Positions 1 to 6,536 of a stretch of DNA of 64,000 nucleotides are shown piece after piece; the first letter of the stretch is position 1; each line of letters begins with the position of its first letter. The notes under the pieces were generated by a model. The model saw nothing but the letters and a program-made list of their open reading frames with translations. It was not told the DNA's origin and did no database searches. The DNA is taken from IMG/VR virus record IMGVR_UViG_3300013104_000001, positions 223,407 through 287,406 of that record, one strand, 5' to 3'. Made by a program: the position numbers and the translations under genes.

Positions 1-953
1 ACAAGCTGCGTAACTTTGTAACTGCAAACTGCAGCAAGAAACCTGTACCGTTATCAGCGACACTTGAAGGGATGTCTGAAGAGTCATTCCCGAACTGGAT
101 GCTGGCATCGGTTATTGCACGTAAACTCTGTATCAACCATGTACGTCGTGGTGATGAGAACGGGCATCTGGTTGCTGCGGTATTCGCATACATCAACTAC
201 AACATCAAATTGGATGGGAAGTTTGGTGGCGGTGTCATGCCGAAGAAAGAGCGTCGTATGCTCGGGGAAGATGATCGTGAGAAAGCGGTGATCGATAACT
301 GGAAGATGAAAGAAGATGTGGATAAGATTGACATCCTGGCTTGTGCAGTAGGCTATGATGATCCAATCGCTGCAGCTTTGATGATCGAACCAACCCTGGA
401 CACCAACATGTTACTGCAGTGCATGAGTGCGATCCCTAATGCATGGGATTTCAACATGACACCACATCAGAGCATGTTGATCCAGTGGGTAACCGGTGAA
501 GTCCTGCCGCACATCAATGATACTTATACGCCACCGTTGGCGACTGAGTATTACGATTACGATGTGTGTGTGAAACTGGTTGCTATCACACAGGCGATTC
601 TCTGGCATCGTGGTTTCCCGTCTCTGGCTGTATTTGCAGCAACATATCCATCTCAGGTTGAAGAGTCTGGTATGCCAAATGCAATCATTCAGCTTGAACT
701 TAAGATCATGCAAGAGCTCGAAGGTTATTATCAACATATCCGTCTGGGCAAACGCCAAGATAGTTCAGATGGATTAGTGCACAAGACCATCAACGAGTTT
801 GTTAAGTCTCTGCTCGAAGATGACTATCAGGTAGTAGGCCCGGATGATCTCCTGGCTGCGTCGAATGTAGTAGATGCCGAGTATCGAATCGTCATCCCTG
901 AAAGTCTATATTACGATGTTGCTAGCTATATCCGTTATGTCGCTACCCGTTAA
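1..953 (+). CDS. Conserved jumbo-phage protein (phiKZ gp67 position), 5'-truncated by the window edge
   Basis: The frame is open from position 3 through the ATG at 72 to TAA at 953. It lies directly upstream of the nvRNAP gene block. The gp number is from synteny only. Confidence 0.6.
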   Translation, partial: KLRNFVTANCSKKPVPLSATLEGMSEESFPNWMLASVIARKLCINHVRRGDENGHLVAAVFAYINYNIKLDGKFGGGVMPKKERRMLGEDDREKAVIDNWKMKEDVDKIDILACAVGYDDPIAAALMIEPTLDTNMLLQCMSAIPNAWDFNMTPHQSMLIQWVTGEVLPHINDTYTPPLATEYYDYDVCVKLVAITQAILWHRGFPSLAVFAATYPSQVEESGMPNAIIQLELKIMQELEGYYQHIRLGKRQDSSDGLVHKTINEFVKSLLEDDYQVVGPDDLLAASNVVDAEYRIVIPESLYYDVASYIRYVATR

Positions 954-980: not shown

Positions 981-2495
981 ATGTTACCAAATTATACCAC
1001 TAACAATACAGGTTTCAGTGGGGTCGTAGAGAAAGCAGTTATCTGCCGTACCCCAGGTTATCAGACGATGCAGCGTCGTCCTTATTCCATGAACCTCAGT
1101 GGTAACACATCCCAAGTCATCGGGAACATGAGCGGAGGCGTGGATTATTCTAAAGAGCGTCTGGCACCAATTGCATCTTCTATTATCATGCCGCAGACTG
1201 CAGCCGAATCAGATGCATTGATTCCGAATGCCTGGGGTAATGAACGTTGTATGTTTATCCTGAAGATCGTGCATCAGGTTGATGCTGCTGGTAAGACGGT
1301 TCAGTATCTCAGTGGCTATACTGATCGCATGGGTATGCACCCGGCTATCAATGACATTCATCTTGACGATGACATGCAATTGTATTTCAACATGAGCATG
1401 GTCTATAAAGAAACCACCACGATCAACGGCTATGGCATGCCGCAGGTTTCTATCATCCCGATGATGGCAAGTCAGTTGGTCATGGGTCAGCAGGGTGGTG
1501 TGTATGGTCAGAACGATCGTACTATGCGTCCTGAGGATATCTATTCATCTATTAACTCTGGTCTGCTTACCGCGCAGAACAATCAGTGGAACAATGGCAA
1601 CGGTCAGGCAACGAACCAACAACGACTGTATGATGGTCGTGTACAGTTCCAGCCAAACCAACCGTATAAAGTCTCGGCCATGCAGAACCTGATTCCATCT
1701 AACTATCTGTCGCGTGTACTTGAAAGTGCTGCAACAGAAGCGATGGTGTATCAGGATGTCGGCAGTCGTCCAAACCCAACCGATACCTCCAACAGCATTG
1801 CAGCTTCTCTGAATGACGGTTATCTTAACAATGACCTGACGTTAGAAATGATCATGCATCGTACTGGTCTGAAAGAGAACTGCTGGATCTCCTGGCGTGA
1901 CCTGCGTACGCTGATGCCGAATATCATGTCTCCTGGTATTCTGCATAAAGCGGGCATGGAAGGTATTCAGACAGGTACCGTTGAAGGTGCTGTTGGCGGT
2001 GCGGGTTCAGAGTACATGAATGGTGCTAACTACGAAACAGTTATCGCTAACATGCTGAACAACGTTTGTAACGCACTGATGATGGACATGCTCATGGGTG
2101 AAGTCATGATCAGTGGCGACAACATGACCGGAACCAGTCACACGATGGGAATGGTCAGTGGTCAGTTTAATCTGAACATTCTGAATGCGACTTCGTTCGT
2201 TGATGGTCGTGATGTTCGTATCATGGGTGAGTCGTTTAAACAACGACTGGTTCGTGAATTCCTGTCAGGCTTTACTGGTCACAACCATGTGCCACTTGGC
2301 TTTAGCGTCAAAGCAAGCCTGATGGGCGAGAACGTCATCGATATCTCGTACAACGGTCAGCCTCGCACCCGTTTTGTATTCCCGTGCTTTGCAGCCTCGG
2401 CGTATACACCAATTCTGACTGGTAACCAAAACCAGTTATCTGAAATCGCAGTCCATACCCGCGCGCTGGTTGGTCAGTTAACAAACATCTTCTAA
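981..2495 (+). CDS. Non-virion RNA polymerase promoter-specificity subunit (phiKZ gp68-like)
   Basis: 504 aa with an AGGAG RBS. Size and position (three genes upstream of the beta C-terminal subunit) match gp68. No diagnostic motif was verified. Confidence 0.6.
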   Translation: MLPNYTTNNTGFSGVVEKAVICRTPGYQTMQRRPYSMNLSGNTSQVIGNMSGGVDYSKERLAPIASSIIMPQTAAESDALIPNAWGNERCMFILKIVHQVDAAGKTVQYLSGYTDRMGMHPAINDIHLDDDMQLYFNMSMVYKETTTINGYGMPQVSIIPMMASQLVMGQQGGVYGQNDRTMRPEDIYSSINSGLLTAQNNQWNNGNGQATNQQRLYDGRVQFQPNQPYKVSAMQNLIPSNYLSRVLESAATEAMVYQDVGSRPNPTDTSNSIAASLNDGYLNNDLTLEMIMHRTGLKENCWISWRDLRTLMPNIMSPGILHKAGMEGIQTGTVEGAVGGAGSEYMNGANYETVIANMLNNVCNALMMDMLMGEVMISGDNMTGTSHTMGMVSGQFNLNILNATSFVDGRDVRIMGESFKQRLVREFLSGFTGHNHVPLGFSVKASLMGENVIDISYNGQPRTRFVFPCFAASAYTPILTGNQNQLSEIAVHTRALVGQLTNIF

Positions 2496-2507
2496 GGGAA
2501 GAATATC

Positions 2508-3977
2508 ATGTCTGATGTACTCGATTATTACAATGGTTTCCTGGACTCCACTAACAACCCGCGTGATGAGCATGGCGTGGTGTTGTACGAAAGCAACACC
2601 GGTGATTTAAAGCCGGTGATGATTGACGGTAAGAAACTGATCGTTCCAACCAAGGAATTCCAAAAGAAACCTGACTGGACTCAGTTCGTGGCATTCCATC
2701 CGTTGTCTGAGTCAATCGCTCGTGGTGAATCTGAAGTACTGCAGAAGGCACGTACACTGATTGGCCTGCGTCTGTTCTACAAATACATCGAACTGTCTGA
2801 AGCGTTACTGATGCTGGCGGTAGATAGCAACGCACAGGCGAAGCTGACACCAAGCACCATGAAACTGCTGGAAGGCCTGGGTGATGCTGATGCGAAGACT
2901 GTTGAGAACTTCTCAAAGATCATTGCAAAAGCGAAAGTCAACTTTGATGGCGGTGAAAACCGCTGTCTCATCTCTCTGTTCTTAAAACGCGGCGGTACCA
3001 TGAACGGTACGAAGTTTGCCCGTTTGTGTGTAGCAAGCTTCCCGTATTACGAAGCGCTGCAGAAGATCGAAGATGAAGCGGCTGATAAGCGTCAGGTGTT
3101 TGGTGTGCCATTGCGTGCTAAAGACATCAAAGTGCTGAAACGCCTGCATGAAGTGATTCTGCCAAACAGCGATGACGGCGTGTATTCAATCGGTACCAAC
3201 TCACAGATCGCTCCTTACTGGGGTGCGCTGATGATGACGTATGTCAATCTGTTGAATCAGTTCAACAGCCTGGTGAAGCCGTTCTCTAAAGTGATCAAAT
3301 CACTGAAGACCGTCAACACTGACTGGGATGTGGGTGACGAACTGCAGAAGTTCCGTAACCAGATTCCACCGATGCCGTATAACGAAGGTGCGGATGCAAC
3401 AACTCCACCACCTGAAGCGCAGCAGCAGCCGGCAGTACAGCAGCAGGTTCCTCAGGCACAACCGCAACAGCTAACGCAGCAACCAGTTGCTGTTCAACAA
3501 CCGCAGGCACAGCCACAGTACGCACCGCAGTATACGCCAGCGGCAGCGGTACATCCGACACCTGCTCCGGTAAACCACACTAAGACCAGCAATTCAAATG
3601 GTATTAGCTTTGGTGATGCGCTGAGTAAGTCGCCGGTAGCTATGGCGGTACCGCAGATGTATCCACAGATGCAACAAATGCCGCAGATGGCACAGATGTA
3701 TCCACAGATGCAAATGCCACTGCAGATGGCAATGCCGCCAGTAGCAGGCCAACAGATGTATCCGCAAATGATGCTTCCACAAGGTCACATGCCGATGCCT
3801 CCTGTCGGTGGTCAGCCACAGCAGCCGATGTATCAGCAACCACAAATGCCAATGTACCAACAGCCGCAGATGCAAATGTATCCGCAGCAGATGCCAGGGA
3901 TGCAGCAGATGTATCCTCAGCAGCAAATGATGCAACAGCCAATGATGCAACCTGGGATGTTCCAGTTCCAGCGTTAA
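2508..3977 (+). CDS. picA: Probable phage-nucleus protein import factor (PicA/Imp1, phiKZ gp69 position) with a Q/M/P-rich C-terminal tail
   Basis: 489 aa. It sits between the gp68-like and gp70-like genes. A globular N-terminal ~295 aa is followed by a low-complexity tail. Confidence 0.55.
   Translation: MSDVLDYYNGFLDSTNNPRDEHGVVLYESNTGDLKPVMIDGKKLIVPTKEFQKKPDWTQFVAFHPLSESIARGESEVLQKARTLIGLRLFYKYIELSEALLMLAVDSNAQAKLTPSTMKLLEGLGDADAKTVENFSKIIAKAKVNFDGGENRCLISLFLKRGGTMNGTKFARLCVASFPYYEALQKIEDEAADKRQVFGVPLRAKDIKVLKRLHEVILPNSDDGVYSIGTNSQIAPYWGALMMTYVNLLNQFNSLVKPFSKVIKSLKTVNTDWDVGDELQKFRNQIPPMPYNEGADATTPPPEAQQQPAVQQQVPQAQPQQLTQQPVAVQQPQAQPQYAPQYTPAAAVHPTPAPVNHTKTSNSNGISFGDALSKSPVAMAVPQMYPQMQQMPQMAQMYPQMQMPLQMAMPPVAGQQMYPQMMLPQGHMPMPPVGGQPQQPMYQQPQMPMYQQPQMQMYPQQMPGMQQMYPQQQMMQQPMMQPGMFQFQR
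3657..3974 (+). repeat. Coding low-complexity repeat: five MYPQ and two MYQQ units in a Q/M/P-rich tail
   Basis: Read directly from the translation. CAGATGTATCC recurs in the DNA. Confidence 0.9.
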
Positions 3978-3988
3978 TCTAAACTGAT

Positions 3989-4028
3989 CGGCATAACGGG
4001 AGGGACTTCGGTCCCTCCCATTTATCGA
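3989..4028. terminator. Bidirectional hairpin terminator with CGGCATA on its left flank
   Basis: GGGAGGGAC-TTCG-GTCCCTCCC lies between convergent genes. Confidence 0.85.
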
Positions 4029-4032
4029 TGCA

Positions 4033-4368
4033 TCATTTTTTATTTAAGTTGTAAAGATCACGAATACTCGAGAGCATGCTATCGTTTTCATCGATGAGTT
4101 TGATTTTATCAACTATCATATCCCACTTAAAGGGATTTACGATACCATTCAATCGCATAATTAACCAATGCATGTGATACGCAACCCTTGCGTTCAATAA
4201 CACCATGCGAAAGTCACCGCGTTCTTCATACTGCGCAAGAGCAGTAGGCGGAGTATAATCAGTTGCCCGTGCTCTTAATAAATCAAGATGGTGAATTAAC
4301 ACCTTACGAAAGCCAGGGTCTTGATAGATGGCAATTGTAGGATGCACGATCTCGTTGGATACTTGCAT
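4033..4368 (-). CDS. Small conserved protein (gp70 position), possibly LysM/T4 gp53-like baseplate wedge fold
   Basis: 111 aa. The segment HWLIMRLNGIVNPF resembles the W-I-N-I-P signature of gp53/tail-X LysM proteins. Confidence 0.45.
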   Translation of the reverse strand: MQVSNEIVHPTIAIYQDPGFRKVLIHHLDLLRARATDYTPPTALAQYEERGDFRMVLLNARVAYHMHWLIMRLNGIVNPFKWDMIVDKIKLIDENDSMLSSIRDLYNLNKK

Positions 4369-4403: not shown

Positions 4404-4436
4404 CATTGTGCAGTTAGGTTGATAAAAGGAACAGCA

Positions 4437-6536
4437 ATGAATCACATTACCGAAGCAAGTGAATTATCTCCCGATATCTTAGGCGGTATTCTTTGTTTGA
4501 ACCCTACCTTACATGGTGATAGCAGCCCACGATCTGCTATGTTTGGTGGTCACGCAGGACAAGCGGTTACCATTGAAGGTAGTACACCGCGAATGTTGAA
4601 GACCGGCATGGAGTACGTGTATGGTCGTCCAACATTTAAGATTGAAGCTCCGTGTCAGATGTTGGTCATTGGGGTTATCAATCGCTTTGCGACTAATCAC
4701 GTAGGTGCAGGCGGTATTCGTGAGAACCCCGAACGTTATGTGATCTATCAGAACGTAGAGCGCAGTAATGTCCCGACCTTTGGCATTATGTGTATTCCAA
4801 CTTACCATACGCGTAATCACGCATTAGGTTTTAAGTACAAGCCTCATGCGCGTAATATCCAGCGTCTGTATAATGAGAAAGAGTATTTCCAGAAAGGCGA
4901 TATCTTTGCAATCTCACCAAACTTAACGGAAGGTGGTGATTATAAGTACGGTCGTGAAACGAACGTTGCTTTCATGTCACTACCAGAGGTCGAGCAGGAC
5001 GGCATGGTGGTCACCGAATCGTTTGCCAAGGCGATGGCGTGTACCAAGATTGAAAACCGCATTGTACAATGGGGTGATGATTATGTGTTGTTGAACCTTT
5101 ATGGTGATGACACCACGTATAAAGCATATCCAGATATCGGTGAAAAGATTCGTGATGATGGCATGCTGTATGCCATGCGTCGAATCATACCGGGCACGGG
5201 TATTGTGAACATGACGCCAAAAGCATTGCGTATCTTCGATCCAGAGTTTGACAAACCTGTTTATGCAGAAGCAGGCGCTACCGTTATTAACGTAGCAGTG
5301 AACTCTGACCGTATGCGTACAGGTCGTGCTGAAGTTCAGTTCTATGATAAACAGACTGAACGCTATGAACGTGCTGCTCGTGAGTTCTCCAAACAACTGC
5401 GTAACCTGTATGACAATCTGTATCGTCAGTATGGTGCGGGTATGGTGCTGGAACCAGAACTCAACCGAATGATCACTGATGCGATCTCTGACACAGGTGG
5501 TATGGATCGTAAGATCAATAACCAAGGTCAGATCATGTCTGTCGATAAAGGTACCCAGGTTTATAACAAGGTACCGATTGGCGACTGGCGTGTGAAGATC
5601 ACCTTTGTTAAGCGTATCGAAGCCGGTGTACGTTTCAAGATCACTGATACCCATGGCGGTAAAGGTGTTATTGTAAATGTGATCAAGGATGAAGATGCAC
5701 CAACGGATGACTTCGGTAACCGTGCTGATGTAATCATGGATGATGTGTCGATCACCAAACGTATGAACTTAGGCAAACCAGTTGAGCAGTATATCAACGG
5801 GGCATCTGTCTATGCGACTAAGGTTGCGCGTGAGCTGGTTGCGAAGGGTGACACAGATGGTGCATGGAATCACCTGATGAGTTATTACGAAGCCGCAGCT
5901 TTTGAACAGTACGAGCTGATGCAGAATGGCATGTATAATGACAAGCCTACTCGTGACATGCATGTTGCTCATGTCTGTGCGAATGGCGTGCAGTTGTTTG
6001 CACCAACCAATCGTCGCTTCTATGGTGCTGAGCAATGTCGTCGTATCATGAAGAAGCATGACTTCCCGATCAGTCCAGTGCGGTATCGTGCACCTAATGG
6101 TGAAATGGTTCGTACGCGTGACCCGGTGATGATTGCACCAATCTACATCATCCTGCTGGAGAAGATGGGCGAGTATTGGGCGTCGTGTGCAATTCCAAAG
6201 CTCACGCACTTTGGTACACTCTCATCTCTGACGCAAGCAGACAAATACGCACTGCCATGGCGTAATACACCGACTCGTTTCGGTGAGTCTGAATTGCGAC
6301 TGTTCCTGGCGGCCTGTCGTGGTGTTTATGCTAACCGTCTACAGAGCATGGCGAACACGCCTGCAATGCAACGTGAAGCAGCATTGATGATGTTACGTCA
6401 TCAGACACCAATGAACATGGATAACGTGATTGACGAACGTAAAACACCATTGGGTCGTGCACGTCCGCTACAAATGTATAAGCACAACCAAAGCTGTCGT
6501 GGTATCGAGTTTGAAACCACTACACTTGCGAGCTAA
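4437..6536 (+). CDS. rpoB: Non-virion RNA polymerase beta-like subunit, C-terminal part (phiKZ gp71-73-like), uninterrupted
   Basis: Motifs include KITDTHGGKGVI (beta GDK..RHGxKG), KRMNLG and TRFGESE (QRFGEME). The ATG at 4437 follows an AAGGA RBS. Confidence 0.9.
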   Translation: MNHITEASELSPDILGGILCLNPTLHGDSSPRSAMFGGHAGQAVTIEGSTPRMLKTGMEYVYGRPTFKIEAPCQMLVIGVINRFATNHVGAGGIRENPERYVIYQNVERSNVPTFGIMCIPTYHTRNHALGFKYKPHARNIQRLYNEKEYFQKGDIFAISPNLTEGGDYKYGRETNVAFMSLPEVEQDGMVVTESFAKAMACTKIENRIVQWGDDYVLLNLYGDDTTYKAYPDIGEKIRDDGMLYAMRRIIPGTGIVNMTPKALRIFDPEFDKPVYAEAGATVINVAVNSDRMRTGRAEVQFYDKQTERYERAAREFSKQLRNLYDNLYRQYGAGMVLEPELNRMITDAISDTGGMDRKINNQGQIMSVDKGTQVYNKVPIGDWRVKITFVKRIEAGVRFKITDTHGGKGVIVNVIKDEDAPTDDFGNRADVIMDDVSITKRMNLGKPVEQYINGASVYATKVARELVAKGDTDGAWNHLMSYYEAAAFEQYELMQNGMYNDKPTRDMHVAHVCANGVQLFAPTNRRFYGAEQCRRIMKKHDFPISPVRYRAPNGEMVRTRDPVMIAPIYIILLEKMGEYWASCAIPKLTHFGTLSSLTQADKYALPWRNTPTRFGESELRLFLAACRGVYANRLQSMANTPAMQREAALMMLRHQTPMNMDNVIDERKTPLGRARPLQMYKHNQSCRGIEFETTTLAS

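What the first reader, a model, noticed from the sequence alone, without database searches (positions are those of the whole stretch)
3397..3977. Prion-like MYPQ/Q-rich tail on the PicA/Imp1-position nuclear-import protein
Seen: the last ~190 aa are almost charge-free and dominated by Q, P, M and A. Seven spaced MY(P/Q)Q aromatic 'stickers' are present, and the protein ends GMFQFQR. Established: phiKZ gp69 (PicA/Imp1) gates protein import through the chimallin shell, and sticker-spacer low-complexity regions drive phase separation, as in FG-nucleoporins. Inference: if the synteny-based identity holds, the tail could form a condensate or selective barrier at the import site, a convergent analogue of the nuclear-pore FG mesh.
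Basis: partly seen in the sequence, partly recalled or inferred. Interest (0 to 1): 0.62.

Follow-up and report, generated by a model that had tools for sequence, protein, structure and literature searches.

The report
Sticky disordered tail, wrong protein name
The glutamine/proline/methionine-rich tail is real, but it belongs to the gene next to the phage nuclear importer PicA: a conserved protein of unknown function (phiKZ gp70 / PhiPA3 gp64 family) whose PhiPA3 member sits on the phage nuclear shell.

Summary
ORF 2508-3977 (+, 489 aa) ends in a 195-aa tail (aa 295-489) with Q 27%, P 19%, M 14% and only 6 charged residues. It has seven MY(P/Q)Q motifs and ends GMFQFQR.

The identity is off by one gene. 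phiKZ gp69 (PicA/Imp1) matches the upstream ORF 981-2495 (E 1e-33). The tailed protein matches phiKZ gp70 (E 1e-37), the family of PhiPA3 gp64 and 201phi2-1 gp126. Published work places gp64 on the nuclear shell, reports no gp70-Imp1 co-purification, and found no knock-down phenotype for gp70.

AlphaFold2 gives a confident N-domain (1-294) with no known fold, and a tail with pLDDT below 50. All 34 orthologs examined carry a 106-301 aa low-complexity tail. Composition changes by clade: Q/P/M/Y, M/Q/N/G, G/W/Q, R/D/E or G/S/L/N.

Beyond the finding, the same MYPQ "dialect" opens a second, clade-specific protein of this genome and co-varies with the tail across five phages (best of 120 pairings). 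Chimallin here has a Q-rich N-terminal extension. A complex prediction gave weak support for tail-chimallin contact (0.54; best control 0.00).

Best reading: a multivalent tether or condensation module at the shell, like ChmC's tail. An import-gating, FG-like mesh is unsupported.

The parts
2508..3977 (+). Whole gene: ortholog of phiKZ gp70 / PhiPA3 gp64 / 201phi2-1 gp126 (phrog_3520), 489 aa. ATG at 2508, 12 nt after the stop of the PicA-like gene, with AAGGGAAG upstream. TAA at 3975-3977.
2508..3389 (+). Folded N-terminal domain, aa 1-294, mixed alpha/beta. Family-invariant residues include the FHPLSE..R.GES block (aa 63-75) and the closing I-P..N-x-G (aa 286-294). No known fold found.
   Evidence: AF2 pLDDT about 90; Foldseek PDB no hit (71); VIA wide best Z 4.5 (74); PDB profile search none (73); ESM Atlas TM at most 0.32 (116); alignment
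3390..3563 (+). Tail part A, aa 295-352: Q/P/A-rich (Q 31%, P 22%, A 19%), no Met, predicted disordered.
3564..3641 (+). Mid-tail island, aa 353-378 (APVNHTKTSNSNGISFGDALSKSPVA). The short motif GISFGDAL (aa 365-372, nt 3600-3623) recurs in most orthologs whatever the tail chemistry. AF2 draws a small low-confidence helix at 368-373.
   Evidence: A degenerate motif, defined after looking at the data, is found in 28 of 34 tails against 7.9 expected after shuffling
3642..3974 (+). Tail part B, aa 379-489: M/Q/P/Y-rich (Q 32%, M 25%, P 20%, Y 6%; one charged residue). Holds seven MY(P/Q)Q motifs starting at nt 3657, 3696, 3756, 3828, 3852, 3876 and 3909. Weak cryptic DNA repeats of period 9, 15 and 24.
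3954..3974 (+). C-terminal tip GMFQFQR (aa 483-489). An aromatic residue near the end followed by a terminal Arg is kept in most of the Q/P/M clade (FQFQR, FQFGR, MKFR, FTFVR, GYIR, FPLVR; MMGR is an exception).
981..2495 (+). The real PicA/Imp1 ortholog (504 aa, phrog_3141), immediately upstream. It has no long low-complexity tail here.
   Evidence: blastp to phiKZ gp69 E 1e-33 over aa 16-480; tblastn in the genome (68); PHROG both ways (6, 123)
3..953 (+). C-terminal part of the phiKZ gp68-like subunit of the non-virion RNA polymerase (phrog_3209), cut by the window edge. Fixes the gene order gp68-gp69-gp70.
3998..4019 (.). GC-rich hairpin GGGAGGGAC-TTCG-GTCCCTCCC between the convergent gene ends; probably a two-way terminator. 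The consensus scan did not call it because the T run is short.
   Evidence: read from the sequence; scan
4033..4368 (-). Small conserved reverse-strand gene (111 aa, phrog_3455, unknown). It holds the same position in all 21 phage loci fetched except phiKZ.

Best explanation
The gene encodes the ortholog of phiKZ gp70 / PhiPA3 gp64. This is a conserved nucleus-forming-phage (chimallivirus) protein of unknown function, encoded next to PicA inside the block of non-virion RNA polymerase genes.

It has a folded N-domain of no known fold (aa 1-294) and a 195-aa intrinsically disordered, almost uncharged Q/P/M/Y tail.

Most likely the tail is a flexible, multivalent 'sticky tether'. It would hold the protein at the chimallin shell and in a layer of like-flavoured low-complexity segments there. 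This parallels the way ChmC's N/G-rich tail drives condensation and shell localisation.

Proposed interaction elements are the MY(P/Q)Q motifs, the mid-tail GISFGDAL motif and the aromatic-plus-Arg C-terminal tip. The tip may dock on the chimallin core the way chimallin's own C-terminal segments do.

Shown here: identity, gene order, domain layout, predicted disorder, presence of a tail across the family, and co-variation of tail flavour with a second protein. Taken from published work on orthologs: shell localisation. Inferred: stickiness, condensation and chimallin docking.
For: Identity:
- blastp to phiKZ gp70 E 1e-37; phrog_3520 both ways.
- Conserved order gp68-PicA-gp70-nvRNAP beta in all 22 phage loci fetched, with the small reverse gene after gp70 in all but phiKZ, and in this 287-kb genome, which also encodes chimallin.

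Layout:
- AF2 pLDDT is about 90 for aa 1-294 and below 50 for 295-489.

Tail as a family trait:
- All 34 orthologs carry a 106-301 aa low-complexity tail.
- In close relatives the tail diverges faster than the N-domain (84% against 96% identity; 57-66% against 77%), with many indels. Length (191-228 aa), composition and tip are kept.

Shared flavour within a phage:
- A second, unrelated protein found only in this clade (genome 12150-14675, 841 aa, phrog_11639) starts MSNMYPQMMGQGVQMYPQQQMYPQQ.
- 10 of the 11 M[YF][PQ]Q sites in the whole genome lie in these two proteins.
- Across five phages the true pairing of its N-terminus with the gp70-like tail gives the highest k-mer similarity of all 120 pairings, for k = 4 and k = 5. 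Shared peptides are QMYPQQQM, YPQQGMYPQQQMMQP, PQFQPQFQQP, YPQQPMM and QQPMMQQPMM.
- Exact DNA matches are only 15-25 nt and mostly within the expectation from resampling synonymous codons.
- Chimallin of this clade has a Q-rich N-terminal extension of about 40-65 aa ahead of the aligned core; the Q/P/N-rich stretch spans about 105 aa in this genome.

Contact with chimallin:
- Complex prediction of the chimallin core (aa 123-675) with tail aa 350-489: verdict 'weak support'. ipSAE 0.54, 0.54 and 0.55; best of 3 controls 0.00; partner pLDDT 32-34; runs agree in at least 15% of contacts. The tool says a pass at 0.60 or under is more often wrong than right unless the guess was likely beforehand.

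Published work:
- PhiPA3 gp64 localises to the nuclear shell and came down with ChmB together with gp63 (PicA) (PMC10643120).
- ChmC's disordered tail is needed for condensates and for shell localisation (10.1101/2023.09.22.559000).
Against: - No experiment on this protein or on any gp70-family tail was found.
- Tail chemistry differs radically between clades, from R/D/E mixed-charge to G/W to G/S/L. A single conserved physical mechanism is therefore not obvious, and neutral drift of a spacer is possible.
- phiKZ gp70 is listed as a nuclear protein rather than a shell protein, and did not co-purify with Imp1 in E. coli (10.1101/2024.03.27.586873).
- Two antisense oligomers against PHIKZ070 gave no phenotype (PMC12571901 supplements), so the protein may be dispensable in the laboratory.
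- The complex score is in the weak band, no interface was returned, and solved chimallin tail-core structures could have been recalled from memory.
- The co-variation rests on five phages of one clade, two of them close relatives, and gene conversion is not fully excluded (P = 0.008 for a 25-nt match in this genome).
- Even spacing of aromatic residues is not significant.
Confidence: 0.45

Rival explanations
1. The tail belongs to the importer PicA/Imp1 (or works with it) and forms a selective, FG-nucleoporin-like phase at the import site that gates protein entry.
For: The gene is adjacent to picA and conserved with it. PhiPA3 gp63 (PicA) and gp64 both localise to the shell and both came down with ChmB (PMC10643120). 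The tail is uncharged, disordered and carries repeated aromatic motifs.
Against: - The protein is not PicA.
- gp70 did not co-purify with Imp1 in either direction, whereas gp67 did (10.1101/2024.03.27.586873).
- Antisense oligomers against PHIKZ070 gave no phenotype, while PicA scored +++ (PMC12571901 supplements).
- Genetic selections for import mutants in phiKZ hit imp1-imp6 and not orf70 (same preprint).
- There are no FG repeats.
- Some clades have highly charged R/D/E tails, which would make a very different barrier.
Confidence: 0.08
2. The tail is only an entropic spacer or solubility tag. Its length, not its sequence, is under selection, and its composition drifts with replication slippage. 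The matching flavour in the second protein reflects gene conversion or shared mutational bias, not interaction.
For: - Composition differs wholly between clades while a tail of 100-300 aa is always present.
- Indels turn over fast in close relatives.
- There are cryptic DNA repeats.
- This genome has a 25-nt exact DNA match between the two low-complexity regions, longer than codon-resampled expectation (P = 0.008).
Against: - All seven distal Tyr sit in the same M-Y-[PQ]-Q context (none of 200,000 shuffles reached 7).
- The mid-tail motif and the C-terminal tip are conserved.
- In three of four phages tested the shared peptides are not encoded by unusually long identical DNA; the 15-aa shared peptide in Ea35-70 has a longest DNA match of 20 nt, P = 0.32.
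- The matched pairing is the best of 120.
Confidence: 0.22
3. The family works on RNA with ChmC and the non-virion RNA polymerase, for example in handling or exporting mRNA at the shell. The tails would be RNA-granule-type low-complexity domains.
For: - The gene sits inside the nvRNAP gene block.
- Tails of other clades look like RNA-binding-protein tails: RGG/GW-rich in LucasX and FLC9, and R/D/E 'RDYD' mixed-charge in RSF1, FBKp24, 2050HW and pVa-21.
- The neighbouring ChmC forms condensates with RNA (10.1101/2023.09.22.559000).
- Noise-level structural hits include dsRBD-like and HPF-like alpha/beta folds (Z 3.4-4.2).
Against: - This clade's tail has almost no charge, so it cannot bind RNA electrostatically.
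- N-domain pI is about 6-7 in most orthologs, not basic.
- The fold hits are below the tool's own noise level.
- No nucleic-acid-binding family matched.
Confidence: 0.15

Closest known systems
[quoted passage not shown]
   Same: Homologous N-domain (29% identity with phiKZ gp70, E 1e-37). Same gene slot after PicA. Same layout of a folded domain plus a long low-complexity tail. phiKZ and the PhiPA3-like phage also have Met/Gln-rich distal tails.
   Different: Here the tail is longer, far richer in Q and P, nearly charge-free, and carries Tyr motifs (MYPQ) that phiKZ lacks (0% Tyr). The function is unknown for the whole family.
PicA / Imp1 (phiKZ gp69, PhiPA3 gp63), the essential import factor of the phage nucleus
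   Same: Adjacent gene, same conserved block; shell association is reported for both PhiPA3 proteins.
   Different: No sequence similarity and a different PHROG. The real ortholog is ORF 981-2495. gp70 did not bind Imp1 in co-purification.
ChmC / Imp6 (PhiPA3 gp61, phiKZ gp67), a Whirly-fold RNA-binding shell protein with a disordered C-terminal tail
   Same: Same gene block. Folded domain plus a disordered low-complexity C-tail. In ChmC the tail is shown to drive condensates and shell localisation, which is the working precedent. This genome's ChmC ortholog (genome 220978-221742) has the N/G-rich tail ending DFADDLPF.
   Different: ChmC's tail is about 50-70 aa, N/G-rich with an acidic end. 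This tail is 195 aa, Q/P/M/Y-rich with an aromatic-basic end. The N-domains are unrelated, and no RNA-binding signal was found here.
FG-nucleoporin repeat domains
   Same: Long, charge-poor, disordered region with repeated short hydrophobic or aromatic motifs between polar spacers, on a protein whose ortholog sits at a nuclear boundary.
   Different: No FG, GLFG or FxFG repeats. The motif is MY(P/Q)Q. No pore anchoring or transport receptors are known. Tail chemistry is not conserved across the family. Nothing links the protein to import.
Chimallin (ChmA) N- and C-terminal segments (NTS, CTS1, CTS2) that dock on neighbouring protomers (PMC9365700)
   Same: A flexible extension ending in a short aromatic-rich segment (ChmA here ends ...FRTGGAFGVFQG; the tail ends ...GMFQFQR). 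Complex prediction gave weak support for contact between the tail and the tail-less chimallin core.
   Different: No alignable similarity. Docking is a hypothesis only, and no interface was returned.
Met- and Gln-rich low-complexity domains of eukaryotic proteins such as yeast Pbp1/ataxin-2, and P/Q/M-rich amelogenin or gliadin-type repeats (recalled from memory, not tested here)
   Same: Similar uncharged Q/P/M(/Y) composition; those domains self-associate.
   Different: Likeness of composition only, with no homology. In a bacterial cytoplasm any redox sensitivity of the Met residues is speculation.

Membership tests
PicA / Imp1 (phiKZ gp69; phrog_3141) | Sequence homology to phiKZ gp69 | tested here: not met
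   blastp of the tailed protein against gp69 gives only low-complexity noise (best E 1.4). gp69 instead matches ORF 981-2495 (E 1e-33). gp69 falls in phrog_3141 and the tailed protein in phrog_3520.
PicA / Imp1 (phiKZ gp69; phrog_3141) | Gene slot directly after the gp68-like nvRNAP subunit | tested here: not met
   That slot is held by ORF 981-2495; the tailed gene is one position further on.
phiKZ gp70 / PhiPA3 gp64 (phrog_3520) | Sequence homology of the N-domain | tested here: met
   blastp E 1e-37 to phiKZ gp70. phrog_3520 E 7e-124 here and 4e-122 for gp70. 271 phage records match.
phiKZ gp70 / PhiPA3 gp64 (phrog_3520) | Conserved position between PicA and the nvRNAP beta genes | tested here: met
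   Same order in all 22 phage loci fetched and in this genome; the small reverse gene follows gp70 in all but phiKZ. Depositors' notes in 201phi2-1, Eowyn and JM-2012 name gp70 / ORF64 for this slot.
phiKZ gp70 / PhiPA3 gp64 (phrog_3520) | Localisation to the nuclear shell during infection | not testable with these tools
   Reported for PhiPA3 gp64 (PMC10643120). phiKZ gp70 is listed as nuclear (10.1101/2024.03.27.586873).
Prion-like / sticker-and-spacer low-complexity domain | Long, low-entropy, charge-poor, Q/N-rich segment predicted to be disordered | tested here: met
   Q 27%, charged residues 3.1%, entropy 3.25 bits; pLDDT below 50 over aa 295-489. PLAAC, catGRANULE and IUPred were not available.
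Prion-like / sticker-and-spacer low-complexity domain | Aromatic stickers spaced more evenly than chance | tested here: inconclusive
   Window: coefficient of variation of gaps 0.43, P = 0.054; smallest gap 8, P = 0.032. Twelve clade relatives were mostly not significant. The local context M-Y-[PQ]-Q is highly non-random.
Prion-like / sticker-and-spacer low-complexity domain | Self-association or phase separation | not testable with these tools
   Needs purified protein or imaging in cells.
FG-nucleoporin-like barrier | Repeated FG / GLFG / FxFG motifs | tested here: not met
   There is a single FG dipeptide (aa 368-369); the repeated motif is MY(P/Q)Q.
FG-nucleoporin-like barrier | Required for, or physically coupled to, the transport machinery | not testable with these tools
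   Published data for phiKZ gp70 point the other way: no Imp1 co-purification and no antisense knock-down phenotype (10.1101/2024.03.27.586873; PMC12571901 supplements).
ChmC-type shell-protein tail | N/G-rich disordered tail with an acidic end on a Whirly-fold RNA binder | tested here: not met
   The tail is Q/P/M/Y with a basic, aromatic end, and the N-domain has no Whirly or other known fold. The real ChmC ortholog is genome 220978-221742. The resemblance is in mode of action, not membership.

The most novel reading that the evidence does not exclude
Each chimallivirus lineage has its own low-complexity 'dialect', shared by several proteins that meet at the nuclear shell. In this clade these would be the gp70-like tail, the N-terminus of the clade-specific phrog_11639 protein and the Q-rich N-extension of chimallin. 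These segments would co-evolve because they form a phage-specific, homotypic, selective phase on the shell surface. That would be a bacterial-virus counterpart of the cohesive FG phase, and it would recruit or filter proteins by matching flavour.
Probability: 0.15. Interest if true: 0.85.

Novelty: new variant of a known kind. Interest (0 to 1): 0.55.

Why it matters
How proteins and mRNA cross the protein shell of the phage nucleus is an open question. Three proteins of one conserved gene block (ChmC, PicA, gp64/gp70) sit at that shell, and only gp64/gp70 has no proposed role.

This work shows that every member of the family carries a long disordered tail. The tail's chemistry is lineage-specific. 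In one clade it is mirrored in a second protein and in chimallin itself. That gives a concrete, testable handle: delete the tail, swap tails between phages, mutate Tyr or Met, and test droplet formation and co-partitioning.

It also corrects a mislabel that would have sent experiments to the wrong gene.

If the flavour-matching holds, it would be an example of co-evolving low-complexity regions in a virus. It could also help explain why import into the phage nucleus is phage-specific.

Tried and rejected
Fold and family of the N-domain. Nothing usable was found, so no fold-based function can be given; weak dsRBD-like and HPF-like rows are noise level.
- Pfam: nothing.
- PDB profile search: nothing.
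- Foldseek against PDB: best E 0.39.
- VIA wide: best Z 4.5, below the tool's noise level.
- ESM Atlas by features: blank. By shape: best TM 0.32, to a viral cluster of hypothetical proteins.

N-domain charge. pI is not consistently basic, which weakens a nucleic-acid-binding idea.

Second MYPQ protein (P0020).
- Pfam: nothing. PHROG: unknown function.
- The AF2 model of aa 440-841 was poor (pLDDT 49.7), so no fold search was run.
- ESM Atlas: blank.

Other searches.
- The search for related loci in viral contigs returned only 5 loci.
- The word search returned 13 relatives.

Gene conversion as the sole cause of the shared flavour: tested by resampling synonymous codons. It was significant only in this genome (P = 0.008) and not in the other three phages.

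Even spacing of aromatic residues: not significant.

Complex prediction.
- A first job used a chimallin alignment that included proteins from phage-record loci.
- Its verdict was 'weak support' and is reported as such. Only one pair could be tested, so N-domain with chimallin and tail with PicA were not tried.

Not used: reads tools and any genetic code other than table 11.
Full report
**1. What is at the coordinates**

The finding lies in ORF 2508-3977 on the + strand, 489 aa. Its ATG follows the stop of the upstream ORF by 12 nt and has AAGGGAAG in front. Nucleotide 3397 is codon 297, three residues after the N-E-G triplet (aa 292-294) that closes the conserved domain in every relative.

From aa 295 to the end the protein is 27% Q, 19% P, 14% M and 9% A, with six charged residues in 195. 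There are exactly seven M-Y-[PQ]-Q motifs, and the protein ends GMFQFQR. In 200,000 shuffles of the tail's own composition the mean count was 0.2-0.4 and never exceeded 5.

The tail has three parts:
- a Met-free Q/P/A stretch (aa 295-352);
- a 26-aa island of ordinary composition (aa 353-378);
- the M/Q/P/Y stretch with all seven motifs (aa 379-489).

DNA repeats are weak (periods 9, 15 and 24).

**2. Which protein it is**

The window comes from a 287,406-bp single-contig phage genome. That genome encodes chimallin (PF25677, phrog_4795), Imp3-like and nvRNAP proteins, so it is a nucleus-forming jumbo phage. It is nearest the Erwinia Agricanvirus group, with 77% identity in the N-domain.

phiKZ gp69 (PicA/Imp1) aligns over its full length with the upstream ORF 981-2495 (E 1e-33). 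It does not align with the tailed protein at all. The tailed protein aligns with phiKZ gp70 (E 1e-37).

PHROG assignments agree both ways:
- gp68 and window 72-950: phrog_3209;
- gp69 and ORF 981-2495: phrog_3141;
- gp70 and the tailed ORF: phrog_3520.

The order gp68, gp69, gp70, nvRNAP beta holds in all 22 phage loci fetched, from hosts including Pseudomonas, Erwinia, Klebsiella, Serratia, Ralstonia, Burkholderia, Xanthomonas, Vibrio, Aeromonas and Salmonella. A small reverse-strand gene follows gp70 in all of them except phiKZ. Depositors' notes in 201phi2-1, Eowyn and JM-2012 name gp70 / ORF64 for this slot.

**3. What is published on this family**

- PhiPA3 gp64, with listed homologs phiKZ NP_803636 (gp70), 201phi2-1 gp126 and SPN3US YP_009153326, is one of five proteins of unknown function that localise to the nuclear shell. 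It came down with ChmB together with gp63 (PicA) (PMC10643120).
- In phiKZ, gp70 is listed among nuclear proteins. It did not co-purify with Imp1 in either direction, whereas gp67 did (10.1101/2024.03.27.586873).
- Two antisense oligomers against PHIKZ070 gave no phenotype, while those against PicA scored +++ (PMC12571901 supplements 3, 5, 8).
- None of the papers read mentions a disordered tail in this family.

**4. Structure**

AlphaFold2 with a 17-row alignment gives pLDDT of about 90 for aa 1-294 (mixed alpha/beta). It gives below 50 for aa 295-489, apart from a small low-confidence helix at 368-373.

The N-domain has no detectable relative of known fold. The searches were Foldseek against PDB, VIA wide (best Z 4.5), a PDB profile search, Pfam and the ESM Atlas. 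N-domain pI is near neutral in most orthologs.

**5. The tail across the family**

All 34 orthologs examined have a C-terminal low-complexity tail of 106-301 aa. The chemistry differs by clade:
- Q/P/M(/Y or F): this phage, Ea35-70, Proteus phage 10, SNUABM_37, SA002;
- M/Q/N/G: phiKZ and a PhiPA3-like phage;
- N/G/Q/P with Y or F: 201phi2-1;
- G/W/Q with RGG-like runs: FLC9, LucasX;
- R/D/E mixed charge with RDYD repeats: RSF1, FBKp24, 2050HW, pVa-21;
- G/S/L/N: Wellington, SPN3US;
- N/G/M with an embedded small conserved segment: CF8, Kc263, D3.

Two short features cross these boundaries. The first is a mid-tail motif of the type G-x-S-(F/W/L/M)-x-D-(A/L)-(L/M), which is GISFGDAL here. A degenerate pattern, defined after looking at the data, hits 28 of 34 tails against 7.9 expected after shuffling. 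The second is a C-terminal tip that usually has an aromatic or hydrophobic residue and often a terminal Arg.

Among close relatives the tail diverges faster than the N-domain and is full of indels. Length, composition and tip are kept. That pattern fits selection on bulk properties and short motifs rather than on sequence.

**6. Beyond the finding: a shared dialect**

A scan of the whole genome found three further low-complexity regions in shell-related or clade-specific proteins.

(a) An 841-aa protein at genome 12150-14675 (phrog_11639, unknown function) starts MSNMYPQMMGQGVQMYPQQQMYPQQMMPPQMMQQQQ. Ten of the eleven M[YF][PQ]Q sites in the genome lie in it and in the gp70-like tail. This protein exists only in the 21 phage records of the clade that has Q/P/M tails.

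Across five phages, its N-terminus and the gp70-like tail share phage-specific peptides:

| Phage | Shared peptide |
|---|---|
| This genome | QMYPQQQM |
| Ea35-70 | YPQQGMYPQQQMMQP |
| Proteus phage 10 | PQFQPQFQQP (Phe-based in both) |
| SNUABM_37 | YPQQPMM |
| SA002 | QQPMMQQPMM |

The true pairing gives the highest summed k-mer similarity of all 120 possible pairings, for k = 4 and k = 5. Exact DNA matches are short (15-25 nt). They exceed the expectation from resampling synonymous codons only in this genome (P = 0.008; the others 0.05, 0.27 and 0.32). The sharing is therefore mainly at the protein level.

(b) Chimallin of this genome (720 aa) has a Q/P/N-rich N-terminal stretch of about 105 aa with PQFQQ repeats. 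The part ahead of the aligned core is 65 aa here and 39-59 aa in Ea35-70, Proteus phage 10 and SNUABM_37, against 21-42 aa in the seven phages compared from other clades.

(c) The ChmC ortholog (genome 220978-221742; phrog_3284, like phiKZ gp67) has the published N/G-rich tail with an acidic end, DFADDLPF.

**7. Mechanism**

The nearest working precedent is ChmC. Its disordered tail is required for condensates with RNA and for shell localisation (10.1101/2023.09.22.559000). Chimallin itself is knit together by flexible terminal segments that dock on neighbouring protomers (PMC9365700).

I therefore propose that the gp70-like tail is a multivalent tether. It would keep the N-domain at the shell, partly through like-with-like contacts among matching low-complexity segments and possibly by docking its short motifs on the chimallin core.

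One complex prediction was possible: the chimallin core (aa 123-675, without its own tails) with tail aa 350-489. The verdict was 'weak support'. ipSAE was 0.54, 0.54 and 0.55, and the best of three controls scored 0.00. Partner pLDDT was 32-34, the runs agreed in at least 15% of contacts, and no interface was given. The tool says a pass at 0.60 or under is more often wrong than right unless the guess was likely beforehand, and it may reflect memory of solved chimallin tail-core structures. I count it as a lead only.

An import-gating FG-like mesh is not supported. Against it stand the wrong protein identity, the lack of Imp1 binding, the absence of a knock-down phenotype, the absence of FG repeats and the non-conserved chemistry.

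**8. Verdict**

| Aspect | Verdict |
|---|---|
| Observation | Confirmed |
| Identity as PicA/Imp1 | Wrong by one gene |
| Idea of a sticky tail at the shell | Plausible, with a precedent in the same gene block, but untested |
| Family-wide, clade-variable tail and co-varying dialect in a second protein | New as far as the searched literature shows |

Noticed in passing
genome 12150-14675 (+), outside the window; locus L026, protein P0020: An 841-aa protein found only in this clade (phrog_11639, unknown function) starts with the same MYPQ-type low-complexity sequence as the gp70-like tail. About 440 aa of its N-terminal half are Q/P/M-rich. Its flavour co-varies with the gp70-like tail in five phages. 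The AF2 model of its C-terminal domain was too poor to search.
   Followed up: partly
genome 205887-208049 (+), outside the window; locus L027: Chimallin (720 aa, PF25677) carries a Q/P/N-rich N-terminal stretch of about 105 aa with PQFQQ repeats. The extension ahead of the aligned core is 39-65 aa in the Agricanvirus / Proteus 10 / SNUABM_37 clade and 21-42 aa in the seven other phages compared. The chimallin C-terminus ends in an aromatic-rich FRTGGAFGVFQG.
   Followed up: partly
genome 220978-221742 (+), outside the window; locus L028: ChmC/Imp6 ortholog (254 aa, phrog_3284). Its tail is a G/N-rich linker ending in the acidic tip DFADDLPF, which closely resembles the linker-plus-tip layout of bacterial SSB.
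   Followed up: partly
L002:21328-22629 (phiKZ gp70) and L007:3875-5266: The annotated start of phiKZ gp70 looks about 30 codons too late. The identical phiKZ-like contig has an in-frame upstream stretch, MPTISLSKFYSDQVLPAFRYKVGEED, that aligns with the conserved N-terminus of the family.
   Followed up: partly
window 4033-4368 (-): Small reverse-strand gene (111 aa, phrog_3455, unknown) wedged between gp70 and the nvRNAP beta gene. It holds the same place in every phage locus fetched except phiKZ.
   Followed up: no
window 3998-4019: Perfect 9-bp GC-rich hairpin (GGGAGGGAC TTCG GTCCCTCCC) between the two convergent gene ends. It is probably a two-way terminator, and the consensus scan missed it.
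   Followed up: no
window 4419-6536 (+): The nvRNAP beta subunit is one fused ORF here (705 aa), whereas phiKZ has gp71, gp72 and gp73. The PHROG match starts at residue 7, so the true start is probably the ATG at 4437 rather than the TTG at 4419.
   Followed up: no
L002:19608-21281 (phiKZ gp69): phiKZ PicA itself ends in a short (about 50 aa) Q/P/N-rich stretch, ...QPVNMQPYQHPVAQPAQINPKFGDNNAYDFSFQVL. The PicA ortholog in this window has none.
   Followed up: no
L015, L012, L016, L017 (RSF1, FBKp24, 2050HW, pVa-21 gp70 orthologs): In these phages the tail is an extreme Arg/Asp/Glu mixed-charge domain (about 60% charged, with RDYD/RDRD repeats), like the RD/RS-type domains of eukaryotic RNA-processing proteins. 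It is the opposite chemistry on the same family scaffold.
   Followed up: no
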